Positions 3,446-56,549 of a stretch of 64,000 bases of DNA are shown in pieces. Within the stretch, counting starts at the first letter, position 1, and the number at the start of each line of letters is the position of its first letter. Source of the DNA: Malacoraja senta (lineage: Eukaryota); assembly GCA_038087875.1 (NCBI GenBank), contig JAXLNO010003834.1:186001-250000 (forward strand). Direction: 5' to 3'. A program made the position numbers and the translations under genes. Below the pieces are notes generated by a model. It ran no database searches and was not told the origin of the DNA. It worked only from the letters and a program-made list of their open reading frames with translations.

Positions 3446-5133
3446 CTTGACTTTCAACATGCCAGCATGAGTCGTGCTTGCTTCTGACATAGTTTCTACA
3501 TCAGGTGCACATCATTCCCCAGATTGTGAGCAGCGCAGGGGAATTTTGAATATAGTATCTTAGCTGTTACAATCATTAAGCACTCCCAGGATGTCTTTGT
3601 AGCACAGTGCCATTTGAGATCCCATGCTTGTATCCTAGCTGAACCCAACCCCACCCCCGATCCTGATCCTAATCCTCAATGTCAGCTCATACTGGTGGCT
3701 TACCTCAACCCAACTCAGCCACGGGCTCAATCCTGATTTTTGCCTGCATTCTCAGCCACTTTCTTAATTAAAAACCCAACCCCTGGCTGTCTAGATTTGT
3801 CCTCGCCCTCATGGGCACGTTATTGTTTGCAAAGGAAGCTCAACCGCTTCGTTCACGACCACGTGATACCTTGGGCTCTAATGCCGTTTACCAAAGCTGG
3901 CTCACAATGGAAACATTTTCGGTTGCCCAATGCCATCACAGCACGTGAGAATGTAGAGGCAATTATATATATTTTTTAAAGTGTTTAAAATTTGCCTTGC
4001 TGACATCATGGACAGTGGGCAAGATGATCATGATCTGTTTCTGGAAATTCACTTTCCCCTCTCAGTCCGTTCTTCACCACAGGAATATGGCAGAATGCAG
4101 TTCCTTTATTCTCCTCTTTTGCCTGAGCGTACTCACTGACATAATCATCAGTGGACGGTGCAGTGGCAAAGGCAATTTGGATAACTGCTGAAACATGAGA
4201 GCTTCAGTGAGTAGCAAGCTGACTGGGCAGGGTCAATAAGGCAAGCTGCCCACTGAGAGAGCAGACAAGATGTGAGTCATTACTTGTTCCCTGCTGATAC
4301 TGACAGCACTGATGATGATATTCATGAGGTGAATTCTGCTTTGACAAATCCTGTCTCCTTCACTTCCACACTCCTCTCAGATAAGATCTTGTATGATGTT
4401 TCTTTTACCTCAGCGTAAGGTATGTGCGGATGCTTCACTAGCTGTGACCTTGAACCCTTCTACCGACCTGTACATTGTTGTATTGTACCATCACCCCCTG
4501 AACCTCAGTTAACACATTCCTGATGTTAATGATTACAGGTCTAATAGTTAAATCTTATTGATCCCTATGCCAAAGTGACTATTTTCAAAAAATCTATTTT
4601 CAGAATTAAAAGATCTCAGGCTGCATTTCGCTACATAAGAGTATTTAATATCTTGACATTGGTGGCAATGCAGAGTTAGTCAGTAACATTTGGCAATGAT
4701 GTGGGAAAAGAGGCCTCACTGGCGAAGCTCCGTCGGGTACTTACAGAATTACTCATTAGATGGAGGTTGAAAATACATTATTTCCTGACTTACTTGAGGA
4801 CTTTGGGCTGGGGTCTGAAGATTCTCTGCAATAACTTTGAGGCGGGTGTGGGCCCAGTGTCAGTGAGGATGCTGAATTCCTTGAGTTTTCAGGCAGGTGA
4901 GGCTAGTGTAGATGGAGCATCTTGGTCGTCATCGACAAGTTGGGCCGAAGAGCTGTATGACTCTATGACTCCAAGACTATTTGATTAATATGTATAGATA
5001 TTTTTTCCAGATACTATATCAATAGATGATGGATATGTGAGTGATGACATTTCCAATGACATTTAATATGGAGCTCTTTTAAAAAATGAAAAACGCAGCA
5101 CTTTATTTTGAAGCAAGCACACAGAAAAGATAG

Positions 5134-5249
5134 AATGTGTAGGAAGCATGTGGTCTGAAGAAGGGTCTCAACCTGAAACGTCACCCAATCCTTCTCTCCA
5201 GAGAAGCTGCCTGTCCCGCTGAGTTACTCCAGCGTTTTGTGCGTTATCT
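5134..5249 (+). mobile_element. PLE-derived insertion with hammerhead motif, 15-bp TSD
   Basis: TSD acacagaaaagatag at 5119-5133 and 5250-5264; contains ctgaagaagggtctcaacctgaaacgtc. Confidence 0.85.
5155..5182 (+). ncRNA. Minimal type I hammerhead ribozyme motif (PLE type), sense to ERC1
   Basis: CUGAAGA core, stem II AGG..CCU, GAAA, palindromic ACGU in place of helix III, predicted cleavage after C5182; stem I GGU/ACC. Confidence 0.65.
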
Positions 5250-6859
5250 ACACAGAAAAGATAGGTTAGGGACAAAAAAACAAAAAAAACAGGTTGTTTT
5301 TTGTATTGGCTGAACTTGAACAGCAATAGAAGCAGCTGTTCTTGGTGTGCAAAATAAATTGGGGTCAGATGCAAAGTCCAACTACCAATAGGATATTGAC
5401 CAGACAGTCATGTTCAGTCTTCTAGATTGTGGCTGAGGAGGGAATGGGATTAGTGCAAAGGAACAAATATTGTGGTGGCAGTTAAAAGGGTAGATTCGGA
5501 GTTTCTTCACAATGTGAAACACTACCCAGAACACTACCCACTCGTCAAGGACTGTCAATCCAAAATATGTCAATAAATTATTAACCCATGACCATTGATG
5601 TGGATATTGGAACAAATTCTCTTCAGCTGGGAAATTCAAAGTACTTTGGTTTTGCTCTTTTTTTAATCAATAATAATAGTCACTAGGAAAGTTGTTTAAT
5701 GACCTATTGGTTGGTTGAGTTTTATGTGTTTTTTCCTGATAGTCTGATATAAAGTTCCAGTTGACCGAGAGGTGACTGCTCTGCTTCCAGTAATGAGGTC
5801 AGTGATTTCCTCAAAGTGCCATTGCAATGAGGCAGCACAGATGCTGGTCCTTGTAAATCTGATCCTTTACTGGGAGATCGATAAAGCCTTCACAGTTAAT
5901 ACACAGATATTCCATCTTATTTCCCATGATCTATCTTATGCTGATGGATATTCAATTTCCCTTCACATTTCCTGGAGTAAGCATATGGGGAAATGTACTT
6001 TGAAAGTAACACTACAGTAGTGAACTACTAGAAAACACCAACATAGGAAATCTAAACAGAATTGTACACTTGGTACCACGTTCCTTGAATATCAGATTAA
6101 AGCAGGAAGGCAGTATATTTATCCCTATTTTAACCAAAGGAATACTAGAGTTAATTACAGTGTGCCAACTGTTGCCCCAGTTGAGATCATTTAACTCTGC
6201 TTTCTTTCTTGAAGATGGGAGTTATGATAACAGGCATCTAATTAGAAAAAGATCTGATTTCGTACTTATCCATTGGACGCATGGCTTATCTCATGTGCAA
6301 CAGATTACACTTATCCATGGAGGAAATTCATATGGTGTTTGACATTTGGCTTGCATTTCTTCTTACAAAACTCTGCCAGTTTTCAATATTCCTCCAGCAT
6401 TGGTTTAGAATCTGAATTTAAAAAATGCCCATTAACTATATTGAAACTGGCATCAACCAAGTTGCAATTTTTGGTGCCATGCTTTGGAAGCATCTTTTTA
6501 TTAATTAGCATCTATTGATTTAATGGTCTCAAGTAACGGTGCCTTTTAGTATCTACAAAACGGAAACTTTTAGAGAATGAACGTATAACTTTGAAAGCTA
6601 AAAATCATCTTGGGCAGGCAGGCTTTTCATGCCATCTTAATTGTGTTGTGTCCAATCCTTCCACTGACAGGGCTAAAAAGGAGACACGATTGCTCTCTGT
6701 AAGCATTCTGTAATTCAGGAAGCATTTAAAAGAACAAAACACTGTCTGTATCAGTAGTTTTCAGTTAAAAAGCATCTTTTGAAACATTACAATCCCTATA
6801 AAGTTAAAACCGGAAGACAGTTAAATCTATAGCTGAGCTGATATTTTTAAAAGCCAGGG

Positions 6860-7045
6860 GAGGTATTTGAGGCAGGTACGACTTCAGCATTTAAAGACAT
6901 TTGCACAGGTGCATGGACAAGAGAGGTTTAGAGTGATGTGGGCCAAACGTGAGCAAATGGGTCTATCTTTGATGGAGCATTTTGGTCGGCATGAATGAGT
7001 TGGGCCAAAGGGCCTGTTTCTGCACTGGATTACTCTGACTATGAT
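6860..7045 (+). mobile_element. CR1 3' tail, second subfamily (also short copy ~4905-4970)
   Basis: gcatttaaagacatttgcacaggtgcatggac...ggtcggcatgaatgagttgggccaaagggcctgtttc. Confidence 0.75.
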
Positions 7046-9332: not shown

Positions 9333-9422
9333 CTCTCCATAGATGCTGCCTCACCTGCTGAGTTACTCCAGCATTTTGTGTCTACCTTCGATTTTACCAG
9401 CATCTGCAGTTCTTTCTTACAC
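9333..9422 (+). mobile_element. PLE-derived single arm ending at the long terminus
   Basis: ctccatagatgctgcctcacc...gcatctgcagttctttcttacac, flanked by aaataattgttgg / aaataatttttgg (imperfect TSD). Confidence 0.8.
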
Positions 9423-13565: not shown

Positions 13566-13815
13566 CTAGCTGGAGTAACTCAGCGGGACAGGGGGCATCT
13601 CTGGAGAGAAGGAATGGGTGACGTTTCGGGTCGAGACCCTTCTTCAGACTGGTTAAGGATAAGGGAAACGAGAGATATAGACGATGATGTCGAGAAATAA
13701 ATAACAGAAACGTCACCCATTCCTTCCCTCCAGAGATGCTGCCTGTCCGCTGAGTTACTCCAGCTTTTTGTGTCTGTCTTCGGTTTAAACCATCATCTGC
13801 AGTTCCTTCCTTCAC
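13566..13815. mobile_element. PLE-derived fold-back element with intact hammerhead core on - strand
   Basis: Inverted arms; imperfect TSD ataattcacat (13555-13565) / ataactcacat (13816-13826). Confidence 0.85.
13620..13647 (-). ncRNA. Minimal hammerhead ribozyme motif (consensus-like copy)
   Basis: Reverse complement CTGAAGA A GGGTC TC GACCC GAAA CG TC: intact catalytic core, perfect stem II, ACGU palindrome. Confidence 0.7.
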
Positions 13816-14579: not shown

Positions 14580-14767
14580 GGTAGATAAAAATGCTAGCGA
14601 AACTCAGCGGGTGAGGCAGCATCAATGGAGCGAAGGAATGGGTGACATTTCAGGTCGTCGAGACAACCCGACATTCCTTTGCTCCATAGATGCTGCCTCC
14701 CCAGCTGAGTTTCTCCAGCATTTTCATCTACCATCGATTTTTCCAGCATCTGCAGTTCCTTCTTAAA
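14580..14767. mobile_element. PLE-derived fold-back element, 15-bp TSD
   Basis: TSD caattgagtactaca at 14565-14579 and 14768-14782; inverted arms. Confidence 0.9.
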
Positions 14768-15065
14768 CAATTGAGTACTACAAATCAGTGGATATTCCTC
14801 ACTGGAAAACTGAAGGCACTGTCCTTCAGTTGGCTATTAAGTGCTTAGAAGGATTGCAGGTAATGCTCAATATGATATTACTGGGGATGTGGGGTGTTAT
14901 CTGTGAAAGAGCATGTGAAAGTTACGATTGTTGCAGTGGGATAAGATTAAACTGTGAGCTAACAGAGATTTTCATCATAATGCGCATTGTTCATAGATTG
15001 CAGAAAACTCCTCCTCCCACGAGTGAGTTTGTGACCAAAGATTGTGCATTTATAATTACAAGTGA

Positions 15066-24024: not shown

Positions 24025-24236
24025 GATACAAGGAACTGCGAATGCTGGAATCTTGTGCAAAATATAAAGTGCTGGAGTAACTCAGTGGGTCAGGTAGCAT
24101 CTCTGGAGAACACGGATAGGCGATATTTTGGGTCAGTCTGAACAATGGTCCCGACCCAAAACGTCACCTATCCATTTTCTCCAGAGATGCTGCCTGACCC
24201 GCTGAGTTACTCCAGCATTTTGTTTTTGCTCAAGAT
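24025..24236. mobile_element. Older PLE-derived fold-back element
   Basis: Long arm acaaggaactgcgaatgctgg..., decayed hammerhead ctgaacaatggtcccgacccaaaacgtc, short arm ending ...gcattttgtttttgctcaag. Confidence 0.8.
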
Positions 24237-27200
24237 GTCTGTGCAGTTCAGTTTAGAATTGATAATAACATGGATGAAGAGTTTTAACAAGGTAGAGATT
24301 GGCAATGATAAGGGGGTAAATTTGGGGAAACTTGGCTGGGTATATAAGGAGCTGTCAGAATTGCTAAACAATTGATTCAGCCTGAGACAAGGAAATGGAA
24401 GGAGTCTAAAGTGAGGGCACGGAGTTGGAGTCGGCCTATTCCTCTGTGAGAGGAAATAACAGATCATTTAAGACTGGATGGCAGCTTAGTCATTTTACAG
24501 CACAGAGGGGTTGGAAGGGTGGAGAGACATTAGCGCGCGGGGTCAGTGGGCATGTGGAACTTACTTGTGTCGGCAGATAATGTTGCCAAGAGGCTGCATG
24601 CAGATGAGGAAGGGGAAGAAATTACAGATAAATTGTTTCAATCATGCTTTTGTTTAAAGAAAAGCTATGAATCAAAACCAGGAAAGTTGGCAAAAGTTTC
24701 TAATTCGTTTTTAAAAAGAAGACAGCAAACCTATCAAATCACTTCAGATACTTTGTGAAAATCCTAACTGTGATAGCATGCTCTCCCCACCAAACTGAAC
24801 ATATAATACAGAAGTAAGCTTTGTAATATAATAAAGGCATAGAAAATTACAAATGTTGAGAACATGATTAAACTTGCATATAGACTAACATTTCCTGTCT
24901 TAGAGATGCCTCTAAGCTCACCAGACACCAGTACCTATGAATTTGTGATGTGGCCTAGAATTTTGTGCAGCTTCCCAGATGTATCACTGTCTGCTAGACA
25001 GACTGAAGTTGGAAGGCCACGGTTCCAGTTTTTCAGACTGCCAAATCCCAAGGTACTTTAGCACAGGTTGAATAAATATTTTTTGGAGCTAGCGAAGAGG
25101 AAAATATATTTTTAAATATTACAAATCATTCTTTAGTTTTTGATTAGTGTGGGTAATCTTTCTAAATGAAGTTTCTCAACTTAAAAGGTAAAATGACGCC
25201 CAGTGAGTGCTGGTGTAAAGTCAGTTCTTTACGTAGATTGGGAGGAGGAGAAAGTACTGTAATAATAATATTAGGACACTTATTTGGATGGGATTGCTAA
25301 ACCAACAAGCATAAGAAAACTGGTTTCAGAATCCCTTAAATAATATGCTGGCTGGGACAAGTTCTTGAGAACATGAGTTCTTGAACAAGCATTTATAGAG
25401 ATTTTGTGTTGTTAATTAAACTTTCATTTAACTGTGATTGCAAACTTTGTGGATGTCATCATGACTGATTATTGAAAGTTGTGAAGGAAGCTATGTTACC
25501 TTCAAATACTGGAGACTGTAAGTTGATGTTTGTCACACCAATTCACCAAATGGCCAGGACAAGTATTCATCAAATTCAAAGAACAATTGCATGATTCATT
25601 TGTTTCTTCGAACAAACATTCCCAATTTGTTATTCAATTTTATTTGATGTAAACCTATGGAACGCCGTTGAACATAAAACCCATTCAACAGTTGTGATTG
25701 CCAGTGTAATCAATAGCACAAATGGGAAGAATTGGTTTGATATGTGAGGCATTGTTCAGAACAGTGACCTTTTCACTTTGGGAATTTTGGATTGAAAGTT
25801 GACCTATTTAAAGGGAAAATAGTATTTTCCGCTAACTAAAAATATCTCCAGGAAATGGGCTTGGGCAGGTATTGTGGGCACAAGACTGTACTTTAAAGCT
25901 GCCTGTTAATTCAGAACAGATTAGTACCAAAATGGTAAAATCGCACAAATATGGGGAAATATAGGCAAAATATTTTCTTCCATTGTAGAAATTCTCCTGC
26001 TTTATAAATAGAACTGAGTTGGCTTTAGAATTATCTGCCTGCTACAGGTTGCCAGCAAATTATTGATGTTGATAGAAATATAAAGGAATTCCATTTCCAA
26101 CCATGAGCTTCCTAATCAAATGCTCAACTTTTCACACTCTTGCCTGAGAATAATTTAAAAGAAACATTCTAAGGTTGTAACGTATAATTTAGTTTCTTAA
26201 GTGCAGAATTTTATTATTTTCCACCACCATTTAGTTCTTTATTTTCTGGCCAACTTCTGTTCTTTGCTCAACTTGATGATTTTTACAGCATATTTCTATT
26301 TTTGAAGCTGTTCCTTGACTGGTGTTTTCTAATTGAAGCAGAGAGTTCAGATGTATATACATATATTTCTACCTTACGTTTTTGTACTTCACCGATGATC
26401 ACGCAATTTAAAAGCATCTCGTAAATCAAGGAGGAACTGTCAAATGAAGGAAGATGTTTTTTAAATCATGGCAAATCATTTCTAAACCTCGTAGGAGCTG
26501 GTTACATGCGAGGTTGCATAATCATGCATATTATGTAATGTCACTTGAAATAACTTTTAAACTTAGATTGAATAAAATAAATCAAGTTTGGAGATTTGAC
26601 ACCAGCCATTAGAATGTCGTCACCATATTTTCATTGCTGGTTTAATGTTTCCTATATTATGGATTATATTATATGGATGTGAACTATAGAGACGAGATTG
26701 GAACTGGCAAAGCCTTGCATTTTTGTAAAGGTTTTGGAAACATTTTTCAGATTCCAGAACGTCCAACCCATAGTCACATGAAAAAATACATCACAAATGA
26801 AGCACGAGACTCACAGGTCCCACGATTCATGTTACTCTGAGATAGGCTTTGTTGAAAAGCCTTTAATACTGGTTGGGAATGCAGATTTGTCTCTGGAAGA
26901 AGTCATAATGTTGACGATGGTCAGGGGAAAGAAGTTGATTTTGGACTGTGATTCTTTGGAACCAATTCAGATAAAGACCCTTGAAGAATTGAAGAGGGTC
27001 AATGCTTCTTTGGAACAAGAATTATTGTTACTTTTAATAATTTTTTAGACCATCGGAGTGTTTTTGTCCAAGCAATAGTTTGTAACTACATTATCGTGGA
27101 ATAGTGTCTCAAAGTTCGTAAGGCACTGTTTAAAACAAAACAAATTGTCTTAGTTACGGGCACATTTAGTATTAAGGGATATCTACAGTTCCAAGGAGCG

Positions 27201-29880: not shown

Positions 29881-30277
29881 GACTTTTATCAAACTTTTCT
29901 CTGAACTTTAGAACTTGATCCTCTAATCTTTACCCATAGCTCATCCCTGTTGTATTTGGCATCATTTTTGTTATTATTCTTTCCAAATCCATTGCAATAT
30001 GTTCTTTCACTAGCCTAGTGACCTAAATTAAGTATTCCAGATGTGGACTCAACAGCGCATTGCAACATCATACAATAACCTCCAACTGTATTCTGTTGGT
30101 TAAGACACAATTAAGTGTCCCAATTTTAAATAATAAAGACAGAAAATACTGGATATATTCAGCATGTCCAGCAGCCTCTGTGGGGAGAGAAACAATTGAC
30201 CTTCAAATGAATGATTATCTTTGATCTGAGACTGTTATATTTTCCCAGATGCTGTTGAACTGACAGAATATTTTCAC

Positions 30278-31065: not shown

Positions 31066-31218
31066 AGTAGACAAAAATGCTGGAGAAACTCAGCGGGTGA
31101 GGCAGCATCTATGGAGCAAAGGAATATTCCTTCACTCCATTGATGCTTCCTCACCCGCTGAGTTTCTCCAGCATTTTTGTCTACCTTCGATTTTTCCAGC
31201 ATCTGCAGTTCTTTCTTA
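31066..31218. mobile_element. PLE-derived fold-back element, 17-bp flanking direct repeat
   Basis: aacaggttgttcatgat at 31049-31065 and 31219-31235; arms fold at ggaatattcc. Confidence 0.9.
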
Positions 31219-31690
31219 AACAGGTTGTTCATGATGGTGGTGAGAATATGAAATATAAATCTCAAAATCGGGAATAATCAGAAATAAAACCCGGACATGA
31301 ATGTAAGATGTCAAAGAGTGCAGAAAGGAGATCCATCTGCTTCAAATCATTGCACTTACGCTATTTTGAAATAATAGTGATTTTCTTATCCTGCTGCCTT
31401 GATTTTATGGCCCTTGTGTGTTGGGAAGCACTGTTATTGTTGTTGTGAGTTTCAGATCCTTCCTTATTTGTTTGTATGATTTAGTTGTCAGTAACTCATT
31501 ATTTTGTGTTCATTTTTATTTTTATTTCTCTGGCTGCGCTGCAGATATGTCCCTCCAGCTCCTCTGCTTATCTTGGTGATCAACTTTGTGGTGGCAGTGG
31601 CTTCTGCTTGTTCTGGTGGTAATGGCCGTATTTGCAATGGCAACACACACTGATGTTTAACAGGCTGCCCCCTGTGTTTTCTTCCCACAG

Positions 31691-35064: not shown

Positions 35065-37429
35065 CTAGAATTAGGAAACTAAGCAAAATACTTTGTATGG
35101 AACCGATACAATTTACAGAGTAAACTTTTAGTCATCCATCTAGAATGTGTTGAACGTGGGACCAAGAGGTGAATACAGTGAATGTTCACTCAAACACGCA
35201 TTTAACTTCTATTATAACTTCACATTATATTTGTAATATATTGCAAAATTTCAGGTTCTTTCCTCTCCCGATGCTTTCAATACGATGCTCTAGTTAATAA
35301 AGTCATTGTGCCTTTAGTTCACCTATATAAATTGAATTTAAAATAAGGGAATAAAAGACAATTCAGTGGCATCTGAAATTCTGTACATGCCTCATTTTTG
35401 TTATCAGTAGCTACACGGGGAGACATCAAGTACTTCTTAGTGAAAGAGCCACATTGGATTGTTACCAGACATGCACTTTGATGGCAGAGGAGCTAATAGA
35501 TCGTAGCTTAGATCTATCAAATTTTAGATAAAGCAACGTAAAAGCTTATGTACTTACTCTACATGAAAGGTTTTGTGGTTAAGAACAGTTATTGTCTTGT
35601 GCTCCTTGTAGCGATGTAATCTACTTATTATAAATGTACAAAATAATTATTATCCAAAAATATTATGTGTAGCCTTCATGAGAACTCACGGAAACCACAA
35701 CTGAAAATGTGTGTTGGTCTCTCTAGCTGCTTGAACATGCCTCTGCAGCGTAGTAAATGGCATAAGCCTTTGAATGCTCCAATAATTGAAGCCAACCCTA
35801 CACATTCTTCCCATGATTTATCACAAGACAGAAGGTATTCCACACAGCAGTCAGAGCACAGCAAATATTAACTAACAAGAAATTAGTTTTCACCTCAGAG
35901 GTTAGCAGTCAGCTTGGTGAAACGTCTGCTGTCGGTGGAAATTTCCATTTATGAACAAAGACAACAAACCTAGTTGATAAAAAATGTTGATGAAATGATA
36001 TCAACCGGCATCCTATCGAATCCATCTTTAATTGCCGTGACTTTGGACAAGGCTTTGGTTATAAATCGTAAGTGTCTTCTCGTGCACTGAGCCTTTCCAG
36101 GGATAAAAAATGTTCACTGATACACGGGCCAGTGCTTGAAGTCATACTCATTTATCTTGTCAATGTGTTTCCAAAGCTGTGTCAATTTGAGGGCAGCAAC
36201 AAAATGTCAGAATGTGCAGATGTATTTTCAGTAGCATCTTCAGTATCAGTGGCAGATTGTGATGCAGTGTAATTAATGGTGCAATTTAATATTCCCTTGG
36301 CTCCTGTGACATGATAGACAAATTCCACTGCAGGCTGATGAATCATAAACCCGACCAAAAAATAGTACAAAGCATCATTACAACAATTGAGAAGTGAAGA
36401 AAAAGTGCTGGAGGAACTCAGCTGGTCAGGCAGCATCTCTGGAGGACATGGATAGGTGGCACTTTGAGAAGTAAAATTACATTTGTTAGTATTGTGACTC
36501 CAGCATATTTCAGTTGTGATTTAAGTAGGGATTAAGAGCATCTTGAAGGAGTCCTGATTGCAGCAGAATAACAAGTATGTGTTTCATTGATCTATTTCCA
36601 TTCACACTGCAGATTTGCACCAGTTTTAGTGTCAGTCATTTTTCTGTTCTGAGATAAATATTCCAATGAATCTTGGGTATCAAGAAGATATATTGCCAGC
36701 CTTTAATCTTGAATGAAATGTCCCAGTATTGGTGGGAAAATCCCTAGATTGAAGGACACCTTGCTTCTAGACAATCAAAACCCATTCACTATTTGATGCA
36801 GGAAATATAGTCTTCAGGTGGTTGACTTTGAGTTTATTCAACCCTGTGAGAAATAATGGATCGTTCCAACTGCAAATGGGAAATCGCCATTGACAGTAAA
36901 TCAGTCTTCCACCATCTGAGCAGCTGCCTTTAGTGTGAGTGGCATCCTTAGATTACGTAATTGTACAGAAATGGACGGAGGGAAATTTAAATAATCTAAG
37001 GGTTTTTTTTATCATGTTTTTTTTTTAATTGCTCATAAGTCTTAACACTATACTTGCTGTTTTATTAATAACTGCACTGCACTTGCCTTCTGAAACCCAG
37101 AAGTTTATCTCTTCTGCCTTTCATCCAACTGGGTCAAAATCCTGAGGTTTCCGACAACTGACCATTGTCGAGAGTCATCACTAACAGATCAATATTACTG
37201 TAAGAAAACGCACTCCATCTCTTCAGGAACAAAGAATGAGCAGCAACTGCTGCCTTACTAGTATACCCATGTCTTGAGAAATAAAGAAATATCTTACTTG
37301 ATCAATGTTTGAGACACTGAACAATGGAATGGGCACAGCAGAAGATGGTGAGTTTGATCATTTGACAGTTTCATTCTTTGTCAGTCAGCTGCAAGATTTT
37401 ACAATTTGGATGGGTGAAGGGTCGGAATG

Positions 37430-39070: not shown

Positions 39071-40129
39071 TATTTCAAATTATACAGACATAGAATTTTA
39101 CAAAATCACAAAGAGCCGGGTGGCTTATTCACTGCATTCTGACTGACCAAACGAAAGGCCATCAGCACGATCCCAGCTCCAAGCCTGGATATAGCCTTGT
39201 ACATTAGGGCATTTCACATTAATGTCCATATCCTCTACCCCCTTCCAGGCAATTAGATTCGGATCACTAATAGCCTGTGGGAGAACTTCCCTTACCTGAT
39301 CGTTATAATCTTGGAATGCTGGGTTCTCTGTTGTGGGATTTGGATCCTTCTTGTACTCTCTGGACCCACCCCCCCCCCCCCCCCCTTATTTTTAAATTCA
39401 CCAACTAAATATGCCCTTGGGTATATCTGTTCCAGTGGAAACAACTTCAACCTACCCACTCTTCTTATAATTGAGAAATGGCTTTCAACATCCTAGTAAA
39501 TCTCCTTAGTATTTCTGCAAACACATCCTGTCTGTCATGTGGAGAGCACCAAATGATTGTTGTACCTTAGTTGTCAGTTTTCTTGTGATTATGCAGTTCC
39601 AGCATAACCACCCTTGTCTTACACTTTATGCCTGAACTAATAAAGTATCCTGTACAACCTTAATCAGTTTATAAAATCTTAAGAAATATCTAGGTGTGGG
39701 CCACATGGCCATTCAACTAGAACTGCTATTTAAGAATCAATCTTCATCAATTTTCCTAACTGATTTTTGTTTACCCTGATTCTTCTGTGTTCCAGGTATC
39801 TATGGATATATTGAATGACAGAGCATCCACTGCTCTCTAGATAGAGAATTCCAGCAACCCTTTACCTGTTAAGTAAAGAAATTCCTCATTGCATAGCTAC
39901 ATATTCATCTATATATTGTGAGACCGTCCCGAACTCCCAGCCGAAGGAAACAAACTCTCAGCACACATCCTGTCAAATCTCTTCAGAATCTAATCTTATT
40001 CGCTCTTATTATTTTCAACTCCAGTTGAAAATATCCAACTTACTATTTCCTTATAGTCAGAACTTCCATCATTTCCTTTCTTGCTTCTATGAAATACATT
40101 TCACCCAGGTCTGAAATTGTACGTAAAGC

Positions 40130-40300
40130 ACAAACTCACAGGTCAGACAGCATCTGTGGAGAAAATGGACAGGCGACGTTTTGGGTTGAATAACGGTCCT
40201 GCCCCGAAATGTCATCTGTCCATTGCCTCCAAGATGCTTCCTGACCCGCTGAGTACCTCCAGCACTTTGTGTTATGCTCGAGATTCCAGCATCTGTAATC
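40130..40300. mobile_element. Older PLE-derived fold-back element
   Basis: aactcacaggtcagacagcatctgtgg...gacgttttggg / cccgaaatgtc...gctgagtacctccagc...ccagcatctg. Confidence 0.7.
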
Positions 40301-41460
40301 CATTATTTCTCCTGGTGATGTATCTACTTTTTAACCCCAATAATATCCCCTTATTATATTCTCCCTAATTAAATTTAAGTCATTCAATACTTCAAAATCC
40401 CCCTCCTTAATTACAGTATCAGTATTGCCCCCATAGTTTGTAAAGATAGACACAACTACTCATGATGAATCATGCCCAAACATTCCACCTGACAACACAG
40501 ATTATATTTCAGCCTCTAAGAGGCCCAGTCTTTCTTTAACTTTGCTCTTACTCTTCATATACTTCTGAAAAAAAAAGGATTTCCTTTATTTTCACATTTC
40601 AATGCTTTCCATGCCCTCTTGTTGCTTTCCCAGTGTCCTCCTTACTTTGACGTCTGGACTTTCACTGCACCTCTAGTCTTTCTGCAGTATGTTTAGATCT
40701 TGCTATCTGATATAAGTTCCCTTTTTTCCCCCCTAACTGTCCCTGTACGCACTTTGACATTCGGGGGTTCTCAAATTGGGAATCCCATTTATTTTTAGGG
40801 AACCTATTTGCTCTGAACCCTCACTGTCACCTTGAATGCCTCACAGTGCTCTGGCATTAATTTACCTTTGAGCAGCTGTTTCCAATTTTTGTTTGCTAAA
40901 TTATATCTCAGCCAAGTAAAGCTTCCCTTCCCCCAATTCCGAACTTTACCCTGATCTATCTTTGGACCTTTCTGTGACATGCTAAATTTAGCTAAATATA
41001 ATCACCAACACCAAAATGCTGTCCCAGTTACCTCTTCCACTGCTCAAATTCATTCTCGAAAACCTGTCCTGAACTTCCCCCACTCATGTTGGTCTCATTA
41101 CATACATGCTGAAACAGTCCCCATGAATTCATTGCCATGCAAACCTTTTAAACTGATTTTATACCAGTTAATGTTGAAATGTGTCCATATATTTGCCCTC
41201 TACAGGGTCTATGAAAACATACCCGCATATTATGATAATGGAGTTATACTCATTTCTGTTCCCTTGTGGGAACCTTCCAGCGTGTGATCTCTCACACGAC
41301 TTTTTAAGCAATGCTATCGACCACCCACCCCCCTCTTTTTTTTGTTTTCCCTACCTCGGACTGAAAAACATATACTAGTAATATTGATCTGCCATCCACA
41401 TCCTTTAAGCTGTGTGGCAATATCTGCTACATTCTCAAATTTCCCAATGTATAGCTGTGT

Positions 41461-41790
41461 CAGAATGAGGCCCAGTGCAAATTGGAGGAACAGCACCTCA
41501 TATTTCGCTTGATGCACCCCAATGGTATGAACGTTGACTTCTCTAACTTCAGGTCGCCCTTGCTTTCTCTCTCCATCCCCTCCCCCTTCCCAGTTCTCCC
41601 ACTAGTCTTACTGTCTCCGCCTATATTCTTTCCTTGTCCCACCCCCTCCTCTGACATCAGTCTGAAGAAGGGTCTCGACTCGAGACGTCGCCAATTCCTT
41701 CACTCCCTAGATGCTGCCTCACCCGCTGAGTGACTCCAGCATTTTGTGTCTACCTTCGATTTACGAGCATCTGCAGTTCTTTCTTAAACA
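41461..41790 (+). mobile_element. Penelope-like element 3' end (GIY-YIG C-terminus + 3'UTR + hammerhead + tail)
   Basis: NEAQCKLEEQHLIFRLMHPNGMNVDFSNF resembles the PLE endonuclease C-terminus. Hammerhead motif at 41662-41689 has GAAA>GAGA. Ends ...gcagttctttcttaaaca. Confidence 0.85.
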
Positions 41791-42212: not shown

Positions 42213-42304
42213 TTTAAGAAGGAACTGCAGATGCTGGAAAGTCGAAGGTAGACAAAAATGCTGGAATCCTCACCCGCTGAGTTTCTCCAGCATTTTTATC
42301 TAAT
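42213..42304. mobile_element. Short PLE-derived fold-back element, 11-bp TSD
   Basis: TSD attgagacctg at 42202-42212 and 42305-42315. Confidence 0.85.
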
Positions 42305-42479
42305 ATTGAGACCTGCATTGATTCCTCTTCTCCTGAGATCCCTCAAATCTTTCTCACTCCTTTTTCTATCCATGTCATTGCTACTGATTTTGGACCACAA
42401 CTGTGTCTCCTCCTACAAGTGATCAGCTCTTGCGAAACCTTACAGAGCAGATGGAGGGGTGATGTTTAATTTGGATGAA

Positions 42480-44586: not shown

Positions 44587-45176
44587 TAAGGGAATTTCTT
44601 AATTTGGATGCTTGGAATTGGATCACTGGTAGTGTTTCAGAAGTTCAATGGAAATTGTTGACACTTGCAGCCATAAACTAATCTACATGGTCAGTGGATT
44701 AGCAGAAGTTGATTCTGTTATGACTATCATTACCCATTCTCTTCTAGCAATCCACACCCTGACGTCATCTGGCTTAGCTGTTGGGCTTATTGCATTACAA
44801 TAAATGCATTTTATTCTATCAGACCTCCCTCCCTCCCTGGCTGGCCCCTCCCTATCTTTTCCACTGACGTGACTTGCATTAACATCTATATGAGACTATT
44901 TTTCTACACCTGCCTCGCTATTGCTTTCGGTCCCATCTCCCCACTCTGCCACTTTAGTTAAACCCTCCCGTTTAGCACTAGTAAATCTCCCACCAGGATA
45001 ATGGTGCCTCTCCAGTTCAGTTACAACCCATCCATCTTGGACACCTCCTACTTTTCCTTGATGGGGGGCCTAATAATTCATATACCTGGATCACTCCCCT
45101 CTCACCAGCTCCTTAGCCACATATTTATCCATACCTTCACCCAGTTCCTTGCATCATGGCACAGTAATCCTGAGAT

Positions 45177-45700
45177 TAGTTTAGCTTAGTTTAGAGATAC
45201 AGCATGGAAACAAATCCTTCAGCCCACCAAGTGCACGCCGACCAGCAATCACCCATACACTAGTTCTATACTAAGGTCATAAGGAATAGGAGAAACAGGC
45301 CAATTGGCCCATCAAGTCTACTCCGCCATTCAATCATGGCTGATCTATCTCTCCCTCCTAACCCCATTCTCCTGCCTTCTCCCCATAAGTTCTGACACCT
45401 GTACTAATCAAGAATCTATCTATGTCTGCCTTGGCCTCCACAGCCTTCTGTGGCAAAGAATTCCACAGATTCACCACCCTCTGACTATAGGGTGACTAAA
45501 GTACTATTCACTGGGCACAAATTGCCAAACCAAATTAACCTACAAATCTACACATCTTTGGAGTGTGGGGTGAAACCGTAGCACCCGGAGAAAATCCACG
45601 TGATCACAAGGAGAACGTACAAACTCCATACAGTCAGCACCTGTGGTCAGGATCAACTCCTGATCTCTGGCGCTGTAAGGTAGCAACTGTACTACCCTCT
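45177..45700 (-). mobile_element. HE1/V-SINE-like copy interrupted by a - strand CR1 tail (~45272-45485)
   Basis: SINE tail ttagtttagagatacagcatggaaac, CR1 tail caagtctactccgccattcaatcatggctgatc, SINE core and head 45525-45700. Confidence 0.82.
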
Positions 45701-46061
45701 AACTCTACCTTGAGGTCTTTGTTTTCAACCTGCTACCTAGCTCCCTAAATTCTCTTTGCAGGACCTCATCTGTCTTCCTAGCCATGACCTGTGGCAGCTC
45801 ACGTTCCCCCTACATAATGTCATGTGCCCGCTCCAAGACGACCTCCACTGTGGCCCCGGGGAGGCAACGCGCCTTCCTGGAGTCTCACTCGTGGCCACAG
45901 GACCACCTGTCTCTGTCTCTGACTATAGAGTCTCCCATCACTAGTGCTGACATTGTCTTTGGCCTACCCAGCTTAACACCAGAGCCAGGCATGTTGCCAG
46001 TGATCTGGCGGCTGCTGCTATTTTCCTCTGAGAGTCCATCCCCCAATAGGATCTAAACTGG

Positions 46062-46214
46062 GTCGACAAAAATGCTGGAGAAACTCAGCGGGTGCCGCAG
46101 CATCTATGGAGCGAAGGAAATAGGCAACGTTTCGGCAACGCTGCACCGGCTGAGTTTCTCCAGCATTTTTGTCGACCTTCGATTTTCCAGCATCTGCAGT
46201 TCCTTCTTAAACAC
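46062..46214. mobile_element. PLE-derived fold-back element, 14-bp TSD
   Basis: TSD aggatctaaactgg at 46048-46061 and 46215-46228. Confidence 0.9.
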
Positions 46215-47436
46215 AGGATCTAAACTGGAGTGCTTGTTTGAGAGGGAGATAGCAGTCACCCAACAACCTGTGATGTGACCACTCCCTGAAACTATTTGTT
46301 GAGAATCATCGAGACCAGCAAGCTCACTGTATGAGAGAAGCGAAACCCACTCGATATGACAATTGTTCCTGTCCCATATGATAAATATTTTGTTTATTTG
46401 TTTTAACGAAGGAAAAGTTACGCTCTGGTGCAGAAACAGCATTTTGGTTGTCTTTAGTGCTATTTGACCAAATTATAAATTTCAGTAGGTTTTCAACGAA
46501 ATATTTAAATGAAAAAGTATTAACTTCACTTTTTGCTGCATGAAGTGTCAGGTTGAGAGAAACAGTGTCCCATTGTCTACAGTTAATCATGATGTGAGAA
46601 TTGTTTATACAGCTGCTGTAAGTGAATGAAACACTAATTATTAGCTGGTGAGTGGAAAATGCCACCAACTGTTTAAGGCTTTTTGTATGTGATCTGATAA
46701 TATATAACATTTTGTTGTCTGATTTTTATACAAAATTCTCTGCCCCCAATTTCTCAAATAAATAATGTTTTGAGTTAATTTCTGTATAATTGTGAGTGAA
46801 AAGAAAGGTGCTCATTTTGTTTGCTGATCTTGTTCCCTCTGGCACTGTAGATGTGAATTTGCTCATTGGCATTTTGAAGTCCTTAATTGGTATTTTATCA
46901 TAATGTTGGTTTAGTAAGATTTTATTTTTTATGGTTGCTTTAATTTCTATTTTAGAGTGAAGGAGTTCCAGAATGGAATATGTACACTTATTTATCTATT
47001 AATGATATATATTTGTCCAACAAAAAAACAAATTCCTCCAGGACTTAAATCTAAGTAGTTGCGATGATGAATCGGAAATGTAGGGATTAGTTGTTGCAGA
47101 CATAGAAATCTATCAGTAAGTCAAGCTCCATATTCTGTGCCTCACTTCACAAACTTAAGGGTCCCCTTTTGTTGGGCTGCATGGGATAACTCTCCTACTC
47201 CCCCCCCCCCCCCCCCCTTCCCCAGGGGCTTTGAATCCCAGTCCTGCCTCTGTCTAAAGCCCCAAGACCTCATTCCTAACAGCCAAATACTTCCAATAGG
47301 GTTGAACTTTCAATGGAGGAGCAAGGACATTTTTAGGCGATGTTCCCAGGGATCGCTGCAGGCACCAGCACTATTCCTGAAATATTTTAATGGCTCGGAC
47401 TGGGGTGCACAAGGAGCAGATGACACAATATCTTGG

Positions 47437-47571
47437 AGAAACAAGGAACCACAGATGTCGGTTTACCAAGGTCAGTCTGAAGAAGGGTCCTGACCCATAA
47501 TGTCACCTCTCCATGTTCTCCAGGGATGCTGCCTGACCTGCTGAATTACTCCAGCATTTTGTGTCTTTCCT
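47437..47571. mobile_element. PLE-derived insertion with decayed hammerhead (47477-47504)
   Basis: ctgaagaagggtcctgacccataatgtc; imperfect flanking repeat tgacacaatatcttgg / tgacacacatcatgg. Confidence 0.8.
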
Positions 47572-48747
47572 TGACACACATCATGGCTTACGTTCATCGA
47601 TAGCCTGGTGTAATGGGCACACAATCAGTTTCTGAATGTTAACACAGGAAATCAGTTCCATGTGGGAAGAACAAAAAAGATGCAATAATTAAAAGGTTCA
47701 TTTCCAAAAGGAATGCAGGAGATGAGGAATCTGGAGGTATATGCACATAAATATGTGAAGGTGACAGGATAGAGAAACAGGATAAAGCATTTGGCACAAA
47801 ATACAGAAGTGGTAATGGACAAACATATCATGAGCTCTGGAATTGAGTACATCTAGAACTTAATTATTTCACTCATTTCTACTCACTTAAATTTGAGAAG
47901 GATCATGAAAACCTGGGAAGGTGCAAAGAAAAATTGAGCAGTTGTATCATGGGGAAATTGTTCTCCTTGGATTTTGATTTTATTGACATTTTATTTTTCA
48001 TGGGATTGCGCCGTGTATAACTGCATGGTACAAGATGATCTCATTTTAGAGGCATAATTTTCCATTCTCTATTCGATTGCTTCTTTATTCTGTACTCTCT
48101 TCTCTAATTCCCTTGATTACAGTTTAGTGACTTTGTTCTACACCATCTTTACAACTTTGACCTCTGATGTAGAGGTTCCAAATCCAGCCACTATATTCTA
48201 ATGTCATTTATTTATTTATCCTTTTCTCCAGAGATGCTGCCTGGCCTGCTGAGTTACTCCGGCATTTAGTGTCATTTATTTATTCTTTGTCTTAAAATCT
48301 GTGAACTGGTATGGCCTTTTGCCATTTAGCAGTTTCTCTTCTTGCTTCTGAAGATTTGTGTATCTGATTCCCTGCAATTTTTGCTTTTTTTCTTTCTTTC
48401 TTCGGGTTAGGGGTATGTGTTCACTCATTCTTTCTGAGATGCAAGACCCTCACCCTTTATTTGAGGATAATAATCCCTGAATGCTGAACAAGGGGAGAAT
48501 GCTACCATTTGCATTCTCCACTCAACACATTCCTTACTTCCCATGCTGGTTGTTGTTGTTCATCCAAGAGTCAAGAGAAAGTCAAAAGTATTTAATTATC
48601 ATATGTACCGAAAATGGAACAATGGCATTCTTATGTGTAGCAACATAACAAGTCTGTAAACACAATACTCATAGATAACACAATAAACGGAGGAAAATAC
48701 AATATTTTTTGAAAATCACATCTTCACTAGCACGCTCAGTTTAACCT

Positions 48748-51572: not shown

Positions 51573-51980
51573 TCAAATGCCACAAGGAAGTTTTGCTTTC
51601 CAGTTACACTTTGTTCTCGGTAGGGACATTAATTCTGAAACTGCTTTGGATTTATTTCGTGGCCCTGAGTCATGCTCTCTGTTGCCCATTGTCTTCCCCA
51701 CCCTGTTTCTGGAATGCAGCTGACCAAAGAAATAATACAGGACTGATTTTGCAATTAATTCTGATGCCGTAATCCAAAGAAAAAAGATCTATATGAAATG
51801 CCATCAGTTACCCTGCCTTCACCGCAGTTGACTCAAGATGAATGTATGGCTGATCCATGGATAGCATTCCATTGTAAAAAATCACTTCCTCTGCATTGCC
51901 GTTCTATATAGTGCCTAATCCAGACATTGCCCCTAAAATATAGACTTGCTCTGAGAAAAAACGGCTGCCCCTAACTATCT

Positions 51981-52937
51981 AAGATAGACACAAAAAGCTG
52001 GAGTAACTCAGCGGGACAGGCAGCATCACTGGAGAGAAGGAATTTTTAAAAACAATTTTTTTCCAAAATATACTTTATTCCAGAAATAAATATATACAAT
52101 ACATGTTCCTTACAAAACTCCATCCGACAATTCTCGGAGGCTATACATACATTCAATACTGTTTACACAAATTGCACAATTTTTCAACGTGCGCAGTGTG
52201 AAGAACACTTTGCGATGTGTAAACGCCTTGCAGTACCTGGCCACGGTCAAGGCAGACGTGACTTTTCTGCAGGACTGCGGGCTGCCACACCTCCGCGGCT
52301 CTCGGAGGTGGTCGCGATGATGGCCCCACGGACTGTCGGTATGGGGAGGGGGTGGTTTGGGTGGGAAGGGATGTTAACCAGGGAGTTGCGGAGGGAACGG
52401 TCTCTGCAGAAGTCGGAAAGGGGTGGAGATGGGAAAATGTGGTTAGTGGTGGGATCCCATTGGAGGTGGTGGAAATTTCGGAGGATTATGTGTTGACTGC
52501 TACGGCTGATGGGGTGGAAGGTAAGGACTAGGGGGACGCTGTCTCTGTTGCGACTAGGGGGAGGGGGAGCAAGGGCGGAGCTGTGGGGTACTGAGGAGAT
52601 ACAAGTGAGGGCCTAATTTATGATGGGAGAGGGGAGTCACCGTTTCCCTAAAGAATAAGGACATCTCTGATGTTCCAGTATGGAACACCTCATCTTGGGC
52701 GCAGATGCGGTGTAGATGGAGGAATTGGGAGTAGGGGATGGGGTCTTTGCAGGAAGCAGGGTGGGAAGGCGTGTAGTCAAGATAGTTGTAGGAGTCAGTG
52801 GGTTTGTAATAGACGTCAGTCAATAGTCTATTTCTTGTGATGGAGACTGTGAGATCATGAAAGGGGAAGGAGGTGTCGGAGATGGTCCGAGTAAATTTGA
52901 GTGCAGGATGAAAATTAGTGGTGAAGTTGATAACTAA
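51981..52937 (-). mobile_element. Penelope-like element fragment (RT C-terminus + 3' arm), interrupted
   Basis: ORF 52554-52823 (TDVYYKPTDSYNYLDYTPSHPASCKDPIPYSQFLHLHRIC) is PLE RT thumb region, Neptune-like. Flanking repeat ctaactatct at 51971-51980 / 52938-52947. Confidence 0.85.
52043..52347. mobile_element. Tx1/L1-clade LINE pieces: 3' tail (- strand, ~52043-52170) joined to APE endonuclease N-terminus (+ strand, 52186-52347)
   Basis: + frame NVRSVKNTLRCVNALQYLATVKADVTFLQDCGLPH...*WPHGLSVWG (NVR and D..FLQE/D motifs); - strand aataaagtatattttggaaaaaaa. Confidence 0.7.
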
Positions 52938-53231
52938 CTAACTATCTGTCTTAATTGCTTAGCTTAGTTGAAGTGTCAGTGCCTTTGCCGTTCCTTTATG
53001 ATTTTTTTATTTTATTTTTTAAAACATAAGGAAAGTTCTATGATTTAAAAGTCAGTTATAGTATTGCTGAAAGTGGGAGGTACAAATTTTACAATTTCTG
53101 CAGTCGTCCATCATCATAAAATACTGATCTAAAACATAATTTCTGTAGCTAAATAGGTATACATGAATCGCAATTCGTCTGTAGCTTCAAAAACCCTCTG
53201 ATCTAAAGACTGAATTTGGTTTTCTGAGGCC

Positions 53232-54419: not shown

Positions 54420-54900
54420 CACTAGTTTAAACCCTTCCGGCGAGCAGGAACGAGCCTCTCTGCTAGGACATTAATTCACCCGCTGTTCGGATGCAGCACA
54501 TCCCTCTTGCACAGGTCTCCCCTGCCCAGGAAGAGATCCCAGTGATCCATATACAAAGCCCATCCTCCTTAGTGCATTAGCTCCTTAGCCACATATTGAA
54601 CTGCACTATCTTTCTACTTCTTGCCTCACTAGCTAGTAGCACTAGCTCATTACAACCCTGGAGGGTCCAGTTTTTTAACCTGTTACCAAACACCCTAAAT
54701 ACTCCTTGCAGGACCCCATCTCCCTTCTCCTTATGTCATTGGTAGCAATGTGGACCACAATCTCTGCTTGCTCCCTCTCCCCACTCAGAATATGCCATCT
54801 CCCCACAGAGGTATCCTTGACGCTGGCACCAGGAAGAGAACACCCCATCCTGGAGTCTCATTTCCAGCCACAGAGACTCCTATCTGTACCCCTGATGTAG
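54420..54900 (-). mobile_element. CR1 ORF1 esterase-like remnant
   Basis: Reverse complement reads GRGDLCKRDVLHPNSG*INVLAERLVPARRKGLN*. Confidence 0.65.
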
Positions 54901-55159
54901 AGGTTTCTATCAGTATTAACCCCTTATACGATCATCACAGTTTGTTGATTTCCTATCTTGAAAATAGTTGCATTGAATTTCAAATAACTCAGACATGGTT
55001 AATGCTGTCCAATCATTTCTACTTTACATCCCTGGCCCAGATAAACATGATTAGCCTAGATTGTCACTAAAATTCTGTTCATAGAAATATGTATAAATAC
55101 AATGTTTTTTTGGTAAATTTGTGGGTAAACCTGCTAAAAGATGGAATCATTGACTCAAA

Positions 55160-55377
55160 GGTAGACAAAAATGCTGGAGAAACCCAGCGGGTGAGGCAGC
55201 ATCTGTGGAGCGAAGGAATAGGTGACGATTCGGGTCGAGACCCTTCTTCAGACTGAAGGGTCTCGACTCGAAACGTCACCTATTCCTTCGCTCCATAGAT
55301 GCTGCCTCACCCGCTGAGCATCTCCAGCATTTTTGTCTAACTGCGATTTTTCCAGCATCTGCAGTTCTTTCTTAAAT
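55160..55377. mobile_element. PLE-derived fold-back element with two opposed hammerhead motifs, 16-bp TSD
   Basis: TSD gaatcattgactcaaa at 55144-55159 and 55378-55393; ~90-bp inverted arms; motifs at 55224-55251 (-) and 55253-55277 (+). Confidence 0.92.
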
Positions 55378-56549
55378 GAATCATTGACTCAAAACTGTGA
55401 AAGTACAGCAATCGTCAAACAAAAAGAAAAAACATTTGAATGGGAAAGACCCACTAAGGAAGTGAGCGTGGGGTATAATGGAGCAAGACTTTGTAACCAC
55501 CACCAAGGGAATTGTTTCTCTCATTATAACCTCTGGCGGAAAGGACTGTAAATTGTTCTGAGAGGCAGTCATTTGTTGTAGATTAGACTGTACAAATATT
55601 TTGACACTTTGGCACTTTGGTAACAAATCACGGAGATGTTGGGAAAATCTGCCATCAATTCAAATCCATTCACTTGACAATACTGGCCAATGGGAGCGAG
55701 CTGCAGATAAATGTTACTTTTAAGATTACGATTTCTTAATTTTCCAAACAGCATCGTGTTATCCACTACCCCACTACCCCAAGTCTTTTACCCACAACCA
55801 GAGGACATAGGTTTAATGTAAAAGGGGTACAATTTAATGGGAACCTGAGGGGTAATTTTTTTACGCAGGTATTTATATTGCGTTATCTGCGTTTAGAATT
55901 ATGCACTATTGTCCAACAAGTTGTCCAATGTTGTGTGAAATATATAGAATGAGAGTAGAATATGCACATAATGTAGCAGAAACACTGCCATTTTGCTCAT
56001 TCTTCATAATGTATTTCTGTTTACACAAAACAAATCCAATACAGGGACATTTATTCTCCTGAAACATCCTAAATTCTACCCACTCTGTATTTAGTGCAGA
56101 CGATGGTACAGAAGATACCAGAGTGGTGCAGGATGGGGATGGGGCTCCAATGGGGAGTTTGCAGAAAGCACACTGTTGGTAAATCATTGATCGCATTCCC
56201 ATACTCTGAGAGAACACTCCAAGTTGGAAGCATTGAATTGTGAAATCACTATGTTCGCTACAGCATAATTATAATAATAATCAGTCTTATCAGCACAGTT
56301 TTGTAATGCAATAGAAACTGTTTAGTTTCATTACTTTATAATCTAATTGTTGATCACACTGCCCTTGTGATTCTAGAAAGTATGCCCCAAAACTACTTTC
56401 TTATTTTTGCAATGTCGAATTCCATTCGTTTAATTATAATTTATCTTTACAATCTCCTTACAAAATGGAAACACAAATGTTAGGAAACTTGCGTTATTGC
56501 GTGTCATGAAGCGTGAATATATTCAATCGATTAGATTCATATCAAATGA

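What the first reader, a model, noticed from the sequence alone, without database searches (positions are those of the whole stretch)
5119..55393. Penelope-derived fold-back insertions with two fixed outward-facing ends ~37 nt apart: signature of priming on both target strands
Seen: copies at 5134, 13566, 14580, 24025, 31066, 42213, 46062, 47437 and 55160 are inverted-arm structures, most with 11-17 bp direct repeats at the flanks (none found for 24025). The two ends are not equivalent. End A runs to ...ctgcagttctttcttaaaca (or ...ctacacat). End B stops near ...gtctacc/gtctatct, about 37 nt earlier on the same parent sequence (13566 is a little shorter). Both ends point outward, and the fold point differs between copies. 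At 5134, end A is only ~13 nt (aatgtgtaggaag); at 55160 both arms reach the hammerhead. Established: PLEs often show inverted pseudo-LTR arrangements and a short 3' extension. Inference: these are not MITEs. Each would be an independent retro-insertion in which both strands of a staggered cut primed cDNA at two defined RNA positions, and the aborted cDNAs were then joined. I cannot say whether this regularity is already described for elasmobranch PLEs.
Basis: partly seen in the sequence, partly recalled or inferred. Interest (0 to 1): 0.8.

Follow-up and report, generated by a model that had tools for sequence, protein, structure and literature searches.

The report
Penelope retroelement fold-back insertions, known "tail"
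The window is peppered with short, independently inserted, often hairpin-shaped end-pieces of a Penelope-like jumping gene whose two alternative ends lie about 36 bases apart; this is real, but it is the "tail" signature and two-start-site, both-strand priming already published for this class of elements.

Summary
I found 19 copies of one family: 10 fold-backs and 9 single arms. Outer ends fall in two clusters on a natural reference copy, B at ref 152±4 (…GTCTACC) and A at ref 189±3 (…CTTAAA[CA]), 35-37 nt apart. Inner ends and fold points differ in every copy. Ten copies have 11-16 bp flanking duplications, which chance gives at under 0.5% of random placements.

Contigs of two related species skip fold-back 46062-46214 plus one 14-nt duplication exactly. 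That shows a single insertion event.

Seven fold-backs are clearly A+B and two probably are. 24025 carries the tail on both arms.

The family is Penelope-like. It has a minimal hammerhead core, a 35-37 nt tail, inverted 5'-truncated arms, and the C-terminal end of a GIY-YIG endonuclease 100 nt upstream in copy 41455-41790.

- Frangieh et al. 2024 showed in vitro that a PLE protein cuts and extends both strands, and starts reverse transcription at two internal sites that bracket the tail.
- Arkhipova 2013 and Craig 2021 describe the tail on only one of the inverted ends.

The scan has noted this family on many other windows of this genome.

Possible small additions, all from small samples: near-obligate A+B pairing, the A arm almost never reaching further than the B arm, and inner ends clustering beside the hammerhead.

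The parts
5134..5249 (.). Fold-back. Inverted A piece 5134-5146 (13 nt) and sense arm 5147-5249 ending at B. TSD at 5120-5133 and 5251-5264.
   Evidence: The strict hammerhead core is intact at 5155-5182.
13566..13815 (.). Fold-back. The left arm (minus strand) ends 11-14 nt short of B and reaches ref 19. The right arm runs from ref 83 to A. TSD is 11 nt with 1 mismatch.
   Evidence: The hammerhead core is intact at 13620-13647, minus strand.
14580..14767 (.). Fold-back with B on the left and A on the right. The fold lies at hammerhead stem II. TSD is 15 nt.
24030..24253 (.). Old fold-back with the tail on both arms (A/A) and no TSD. It is the exception to A+B pairing.
   Evidence: (the palindrome runs through both tails)
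31066..31220 (.). Fold-back with B on the left and A on the right. Both arms stop at ref 95, giving a spacer-free GGAAT|ATTCC junction. TSD is 15-16 nt.
40124..40305 (.). The left end is probably B and carries an 11-nt deletion. The right end is A. No TSD.
42213..42302 (.). Fold-back with A on the left (inner end ref 133) and B on the right (inner end ref 117). TSD is 11-14 nt. Contigs of all four organisms laid enter it.
46062..46214 (.). Fold-back with B on the left (inner end ref 82) and A on the right (inner end ref 117). TSD of 14 nt at 46048-46061 and 46215-46228. It is absent, with an exact empty site, in two related organisms.
   Evidence: table 8, records 15 and 30. Both arms share GTCGACC and a 3-nt deletion.
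47433..47570 (.). Inverted tail only (about 40 nt, A end) joined to a sense arm running from ref 58 to B. The TSD is weak.
55160..55376 (.). Fold-back with B on the left and A on the right. Both arms reach the hammerhead. TSD is 16 nt.
41455..41790 (+). Longest copy, a single arm. It holds the last 34 codons of the GIY-YIG endonuclease (41455-41556), about 100 nt of spacer, a decayed hammerhead, the probable ORF start ATG at 41711, then B at 41752-41754 and A at 41788-41790.
9335..9421 (+). Single 5'-truncated arm ending at A. TSD is 13 nt with 1 mismatch.
36397..36462 (-). Single arm ending about 6 nt short of B. TSD is 12 nt with 1 mismatch. Its inner end lies at the hammerhead cut.
48217..48273 (+). 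Single arm ending at B, 4-9 nt short because of microhomology with the target. TSD is about 15 nt.
51954..52044 (-). Single arm with a decayed tail, so an A end. No TSD found.
   Evidence: 1 of 500 shuffles
548..648 (-). Old single arm ending at B.
62596..62709 (+). Old single arm ending near A.
3245..3331 (-). Very old single arm (64% identity) ending near B.
30127..30198 (-). Very old single arm. Its end is unclear.

Best explanation
These are independent insertions of the 3' end-piece of an endonuclease-bearing Penelope-like element (PLE). They were made by target-primed reverse transcription.

The element's GIY-YIG nuclease makes a staggered cut 11-16 bp wide. The 3'-OH of either or both target strands then primes cDNA synthesis on the element RNA at one of two fixed start sites. 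B lies about 64 nt downstream of the hammerhead cut and A about 100 nt downstream.

When only one strand is extended productively, the result is a plain 5'-truncated copy ending at A or at B. When both are extended, the two short cDNAs face each other. They are joined at wherever each stopped, by a template switch or by end joining. This gives a fold-back whose two outer ends both abut the TSD. The 35-37 nt between B and A is the PLE "tail".

Shown here: the two end clusters, the TSDs, the different junctions, a single-event insertion, and PLE identity.
Shown in the literature for a lizard PLE: both-strand cleavage and extension, and two internal start sites.
Inferred: that this fish element does the same, and how the two cDNAs are joined.
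For: - Two tight clusters of outer ends against scattered inner ends.
- Both ends directly abut TSDs of 11-16 nt in ten copies.
- Single arms with a TSD end at A (9335) or at B (36397, 48217), so each site is a true terminus on its own.
- All ten fold junctions differ.
- An exact empty site for 46062 in two related organisms.
- A minimal hammerhead core (2 strict matches against 0.01 expected) and the GIY-YIG C-terminus next to it.
- Literature: PMC11167929 for both-strand priming and for the tail being the interval between the two start sites. PMC3846280 and PMC8557442 for a tail on one of the inverted ends.
Against: - No biochemistry exists for this element.
- In vitro, the lizard protein showed no strand preference between the two start sites. 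On its own that would predict A/A and B/B fold-backs, yet only one A/A (24025) and no B/B is seen here.
- B is fuzzier than A, ranging from -14 to +2 nt.
- The sample is 19 copies from one 64-kb window.
Confidence: 0.8

Rival explanations
1. Self-priming (snap-back). One cDNA is made, folds back on itself and copies itself.
For: Junctions without a spacer, or lying at a natural hairpin, occur in 31066, 55160 and 14580. Arkhipova 2013 proposed self-priming on the basis of palindromic junctions.
Against: A snap-back copy cannot be longer than its template, and it cannot add a tail the template lacks. Yet in 5134, 47437, 42213 and 46062 the tail-bearing A arm is the short one: 13, about 40, about 58 and about 74 nt. 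The tail-less B arm reaches 16 to about 120 nt further. The B end abuts the TSD directly, so it was joined to the target rather than trimmed afterwards.
Confidence: 0.1
2. A MITE-like or hairpin unit that amplifies as such, as DNA or as a hairpin RNA.
For: The copies have inverted arms and TSDs. Rfam's microRNA-precursor models score the hairpin weakly, well below their gathering thresholds.
Against: No two copies share a fold junction. TSD length is not fixed. The ends are asymmetric. Single arms of the same family are equally common.
Confidence: 0.02
3. Two separate insertions, with a second copy landing head-to-head beside an older one.
For: The family is very abundant, with a summed contig depth in the millions, so chance neighbours will occur.
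Against: One TSD pair brackets each whole fold-back. In two related organisms the whole 153-nt fold-back 46062, plus one TSD copy, is missing at once. The two arms of 46062 share two private changes.
Confidence: 0.03

Closest known systems
The PLE "tail" and inverted pseudo-LTR arrangement (Penelope/Poseidon clade; PMC3846280, PMC8557442)
   Same: A 30-40 bp extension on only one end. An inverted 5'-truncated copy. Variable TSD. A hammerhead in the terminal repeat. The ORF start apparently lies inside the repeat: about 14 codons before B and about 26 before A here, against 12 and 22 aa in Adineta Pen2a.
   Different: Here nearly all copies are tiny (60-250 bp) with no ORF body. No full-length element lies in the window.
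PAc, the Poseidon element of Anolis, assayed in vitro (PMC11167929)
   Same: Two start sites that bracket the tail. Both target strands are usable. The distal site is 85-92 nt downstream of the hammerhead cut in PAc and 99-101 nt here.
   Different: In vitro the two strands show no difference in start site. Here the two ends of one insertion are almost always different (A+B).
LINE-1 twin priming (Ostertag and Kazazian 2001; cited from my own knowledge)
   Same: The second target strand also primes on the element RNA, which gives an inverted segment inside one TSD pair.
   Different: In L1 the second primer anneals at a variable internal place by microhomology, and the two segments cover different parts of the RNA. 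Here both start at fixed sites near the 3' end and largely copy the same stretch.
Minimal hammerhead repeats and animal retrozymes (PMC4209133, PMC7229834, bioRxiv 10.64898/2026.07.22.740005)
   Same: The same minimal hammerhead on dispersed PLE-derived fragments. Cervera and de la Pena 2014 noted pairs of motifs on opposite strands 100-700 bp apart.
   Different: Retrozymes are direct tandem units thought to cycle through circular RNA. These copies are single or inverted, TSD-flanked and mostly decayed.

Membership tests
Endonuclease-bearing Penelope-like elements | A GIY-YIG endonuclease encoded by the element | tested here: met
   41455-41556 encodes 34 residues that align at 58-70% identity with the C-terminal end of protein fragments. 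Four of those fragments pass Pfam's GIY-YIG cut-off. Only the last 34 codons are present here.
Endonuclease-bearing Penelope-like elements | A telomerase-like reverse transcriptase in the same ORF | not testable with these tools
   The window holds no PLE RT. The only RT ORF (33859-35034, minus strand) carries RVT_1 and ALKBH8_N. I read it as LINE-type from its C-terminal ...RLKNSFYPTAITTLN motif, which I recall from LINEs and did not test. No PLE tail or hammerhead lies downstream of it.
Endonuclease-bearing Penelope-like elements | A hammerhead ribozyme motif in the terminal repeat | tested here: met
   CTGANGA-stem-GAAAYGTC is intact at 5155 and at 13620 (2 found, 0.01 expected). It is recognisable but mutated in the other long arms. 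Rfam has no model that scores it.
Endonuclease-bearing Penelope-like elements | An optional 30-40 bp tail on one end | tested here: met
   The A and B clusters lie 35-37 nt apart. Seven to nine of ten fold-backs have exactly one tail.
Endonuclease-bearing Penelope-like elements | 5' truncation, an inverted adjacent copy and a variable TSD | tested here: met
MITE / DNA transposon | Uniform copies with the same terminal inverted repeats, one internal structure and a fixed TSD length | tested here: not met
   There are ten different junctions, the ends are unequal, and TSDs range from 11 to 16 nt.
Animal retrozymes | Direct tandem repeats, each carrying a hammerhead | tested here: not met
   The window holds no direct tandem of the unit. 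All paired arms are inverted.

The most novel reading that the evidence does not exclude
The two start sites are used in a coordinated way on one RNA molecule. One target strand primes at B and runs ahead. The other strand primes at A on the still-free RNA tail and follows behind. So an insertion gets exactly one tail, and the A arm never passes the B arm.

This would turn fold-back mini-insertions into a natural record of the order of events in PLE integration, which in vitro work has not resolved.

Pointers, all from small samples:
- A+B pairing in 7 clear and 2 probable of 10 fold-backs. The binomial gives P=0.011 for 9 of 10 and 0.055 for 8 of 10 at p=0.5.
- The B arm reaches as far as or further than the A arm in 8 of 9 fold-backs.
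- In 47437 the A arm stops exactly where B begins.
- The two arms of 46062 share two private changes.
Probability: 0.3. Interest if true: 0.55.

Novelty: new member of a known kind. Interest (0 to 1): 0.3.

Why it matters
It gives an independent, in vivo confirmation of the two-start-site, both-strand priming reported in vitro for one lizard PLE, in a distant vertebrate lineage. It also shows that these tiny abortive insertions are a rich natural data set. A genome-wide tabulation of which end pairs with which, and of how far each arm runs, could test how the two cDNAs are ordered and joined, a step the published work leaves open.

For annotation, these hairpins should be masked as PLE fragments. 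They should not be called MITEs or microRNA precursors.

Tried and rejected
- Rfam at gathering threshold over the whole window, and at E-value threshold on 55100-55450, found no hammerhead. It gave only weak microRNA-precursor scores caused by the hairpin.
- Pfam on the 34-residue ORF remnant alone found nothing. Its identity came only through homologues.
- Of the eight hits of the representative search, three carry unrelated domains (a GPCR, VKOR, ALKBH8_N) and one a scatter of stretch-less hits. They look like chimeric gene models that swallowed a PLE fragment.
- Two metagenome scans for the tail and for the conserved core found nothing. The look-up of encoding contigs had no record for P0010. 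So the sample could not be enlarged beyond this window.
- I tested whether the two arms of a fold-back are each other's nearest relatives. The test is uninformative: arm-to-arm identity (0.73-0.97) is no higher than identity to other copies, as expected for star-like decay from one conserved master.
- The tail-like continuation of the left arm of 40141 was not significant (324 of 500 shuffles).
- RNAalifold of the 3' region gives a 7-bp helix between AGAUGCU and AGCAUCU with almost no covariation. I make no structural claim from it.
- Target sites are AT-rich but show no sharp nick motif in ten cases.
- The ESM Atlas look-up gave only a weak GIY-YIG lead.
Full report
**What is there.** A blastn search with one natural arm (window 55250-55376) found 25 arms. 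nhmmer with eleven natural copies as queries added two very old ones. I aligned every arm to the longest natural copy, window 41600-41800 (ref 1 = 41600), rather than to a consensus. I also aligned the two arms of each hairpin to each other.

The family has 19 members in 64 kb:
- Ten fold-backs: 5134, 13566, 14580, 24030, 31066, 40124, 42213, 46062, 47433, 55160.
- Nine single arms: 548, 3245, 9335, 30127, 36397, 41455-41790, 48217, 51954, 62596.

**Ends.** On the reference, the CTGAAGA core is at ref 63-69 and the hammerhead cut falls after ref 90. Outer ends fall in two clusters: B (…GTCTACC) at mean ref 152.2, sd 3.5, n=13, and A (…CTTAAA[CA]) at mean ref 188.9, sd 2.8, n=15. The interval is 35-37 nt.

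Inner ends run from ref 19 to 179, and no two fold junctions are alike. In three copies the TSD begins with CA directly after CTTAAA. So a 2-nt microhomology at A cannot be told apart from the element's own last letters.

**Insertions.** An automatic search found flanking duplications of 11-16 nt for ten copies. The same procedure at 2000 random placements reached a score of 9 or more in 0.45% and 12 or more in 0.05%. The old copies (548, 3245, 24030, 30127, 40124, 41455, 51954, 62596) have no detectable TSD, and 47433 has only 7 perfect letters.

Direct proof of one event came from public contigs laid on 41450-47440. One contig of organism B (record 15) and one of organism D (record 30) run from 45666 to 46047 and continue without a break at 46215. 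They therefore lack 46048-46214, which is the 153-nt fold-back plus one 14-nt TSD copy (sequence). Contigs of all four organisms enter the 42213 fold-back and the end of the 41455-41790 copy. Those two insertions are therefore older and shared.

**Identity.** The strict minimal hammerhead pattern is intact at 5155 and 13620 (2 matches, 0.01 expected). It is visibly mutated in the other long arms.

Copy 41455-41790 continues upstream into an open frame ending …KLEEQHLIFRL..PNGMNVDFSNFR. A HMMER scan of 1.84 billion representatives found eight fragments with this motif. A word-indexed search from one of them found 141 relatives. Four proteins tested pass Pfam's GIY-YIG cut-off, and the window peptide aligns with their C-terminal end. 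So the repeat is the 3' end of an endonuclease-bearing Penelope-like element.

The only RT ORF in the window (33859-35034, minus strand) matches RVT_1 and ALKBH8_N. I read it as LINE-type and unrelated to this family.

**What is already known.** Three papers cover the phenomenon:
- Arkhipova et al. [quoted passage not shown]
- Craig et al. [quoted passage not shown]
- Frangieh et al. 2024 purified the Anolis Poseidon protein. They showed that it cleaves and extends both strands. Reverse transcription starts at two adjacent internal sites. The tail is the sequence between them. The distal site lies 111-118 nt into an ORF that starts at hammerhead stem II, with the cut 26 nt into the ORF. That puts the distal site 85-92 nt past the cut.

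Here A lies 99-101 nt and B 63-65 nt past the cut. I found no paper on this in cartilaginous fishes and none newer on the mechanism. Other windows of this genome carry many first-reader notes on the same family, and one follow-up called it ordinary.

**Rivals.** Snap-back self-priming cannot explain copies in which the tail-bearing arm is the short one (13 nt at 5134, about 40 at 47433, about 58 at 42213, about 74 at 46062). It also cannot explain why the tail-less end abuts the TSD. A MITE is excluded by ten different junctions and variable TSDs. Two successive insertions are excluded for 46062 by the empty site and by two private changes shared by its arms (GTCGACC and a 3-nt deletion).

**What may go beyond the literature.** All of this rests on small samples.

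1. *Pairing.* Seven fold-backs are clearly A+B, two are probably so (5134, 40124) and one is A/A (24030). Single arms use A and B about equally. At p=0.5 the binomial gives P=0.011 for 9 of 10 and 0.055 for 8 of 10. In vitro, no strand difference was seen.
2. *Reach.* In 8 of 9 A+B fold-backs the B arm reaches as far as or further 5' than the A arm. In 47433 the A arm stops exactly at B. This fits two primers on one RNA with the A-primed enzyme trailing. However, an A arm must also travel 36 nt more to reach the same point, so the null is not 0.5.
3. *Inner ends.* The deepest inner ends cluster at ref 56-65, just 5' of the hammerhead core, and at ref 88-97, just 3' of the cut. Seven lie in one 10-nt window (P=0.005) and twelve of 18 in two windows (P=0.0002 against a uniform spread; the windows were chosen post hoc). 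The cause could be run-off on ribozyme-cleaved RNA or stalling at the folded ribozyme.
4. *Reading frame.* The frame from the ATG at ref 112 stays open to end A in three copies of two subfamilies, which differ by compensating -1/+1 indels. The ORF probably starts about 14 codons before B and about 26 before A, as in Adineta Pen2a (12 and 22 aa).

**Limits.** This is one window of 19 copies, most of them decayed. I could not enlarge the sample. No full-length element and no RNA data were available.

Noticed in passing
window 46048-46214: Contigs of two related organisms (coded B and D) skip exactly this stretch. The 46062 fold-back is therefore specific to the lineage of the window's species. 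The 42213 fold-back and the end of the 41455-41790 copy are shared by all four organisms laid.
   Followed up: partly
inner ends of arms, ref 56-65 and ref 88-97 (for example window 31125/31126, 36462, 48217, 52044, 47472, 55252): The 5' truncation points are not random. They cluster just upstream of the hammerhead core and just downstream of its cleavage site (P=0.005 and 0.0002 against uniform). This hints at ribozyme-cleaved templates or at RT stalling at the ribozyme.
   Followed up: partly
window 41711-41790, 14690-14769, 31143-31222: An ATG in AGATGCTGCC opens a frame that runs to end A (…QHLQFFLK). Two subfamilies keep it open through compensating -1/+1 indels. It is probably the start of the PLE ORF, so both start sites lie inside the first 27 codons.
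   Followed up: partly
window 24030-24253: An old fold-back with the tail on both arms and no TSD. It is the only A/A case, and its subfamily is shared with 40124-40305.
   Followed up: partly
window 33600-35034, minus strand: A 391-aa open frame with RVT_1 and ALKBH8_N, followed after a frame break by a second ORF piece that ends …RLKNSFYPTAITTLN. I read it as a LINE-type element that is not part of the Penelope family.
   Followed up: partly
window 42850-43250 and 45050-45650: These stretches have by far the highest summed contig depth in all four organisms (up to 2.5e7). They are other, even more abundant repeat families. Many contigs join 43173 to 45186.
   Followed up: no
ref 110-116 and ref 170-176 (window 41709-41715 and 41769-41775): AGAUGCU at the putative start codon can pair with AGCAUCU inside the tail. 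CCAGCAU occurs twice, about 12 nt before B and about 19 nt before A. There is almost no covariation, so this is only a lead for what marks the two start sites.
   Followed up: partly
proteins P0004, P0005, P0007: Public gene models fuse this PLE endonuclease tail to a VKOR domain, a GPCR or a LINE fragment. These are probably annotation chimeras caused by the repeat.
   Followed up: no
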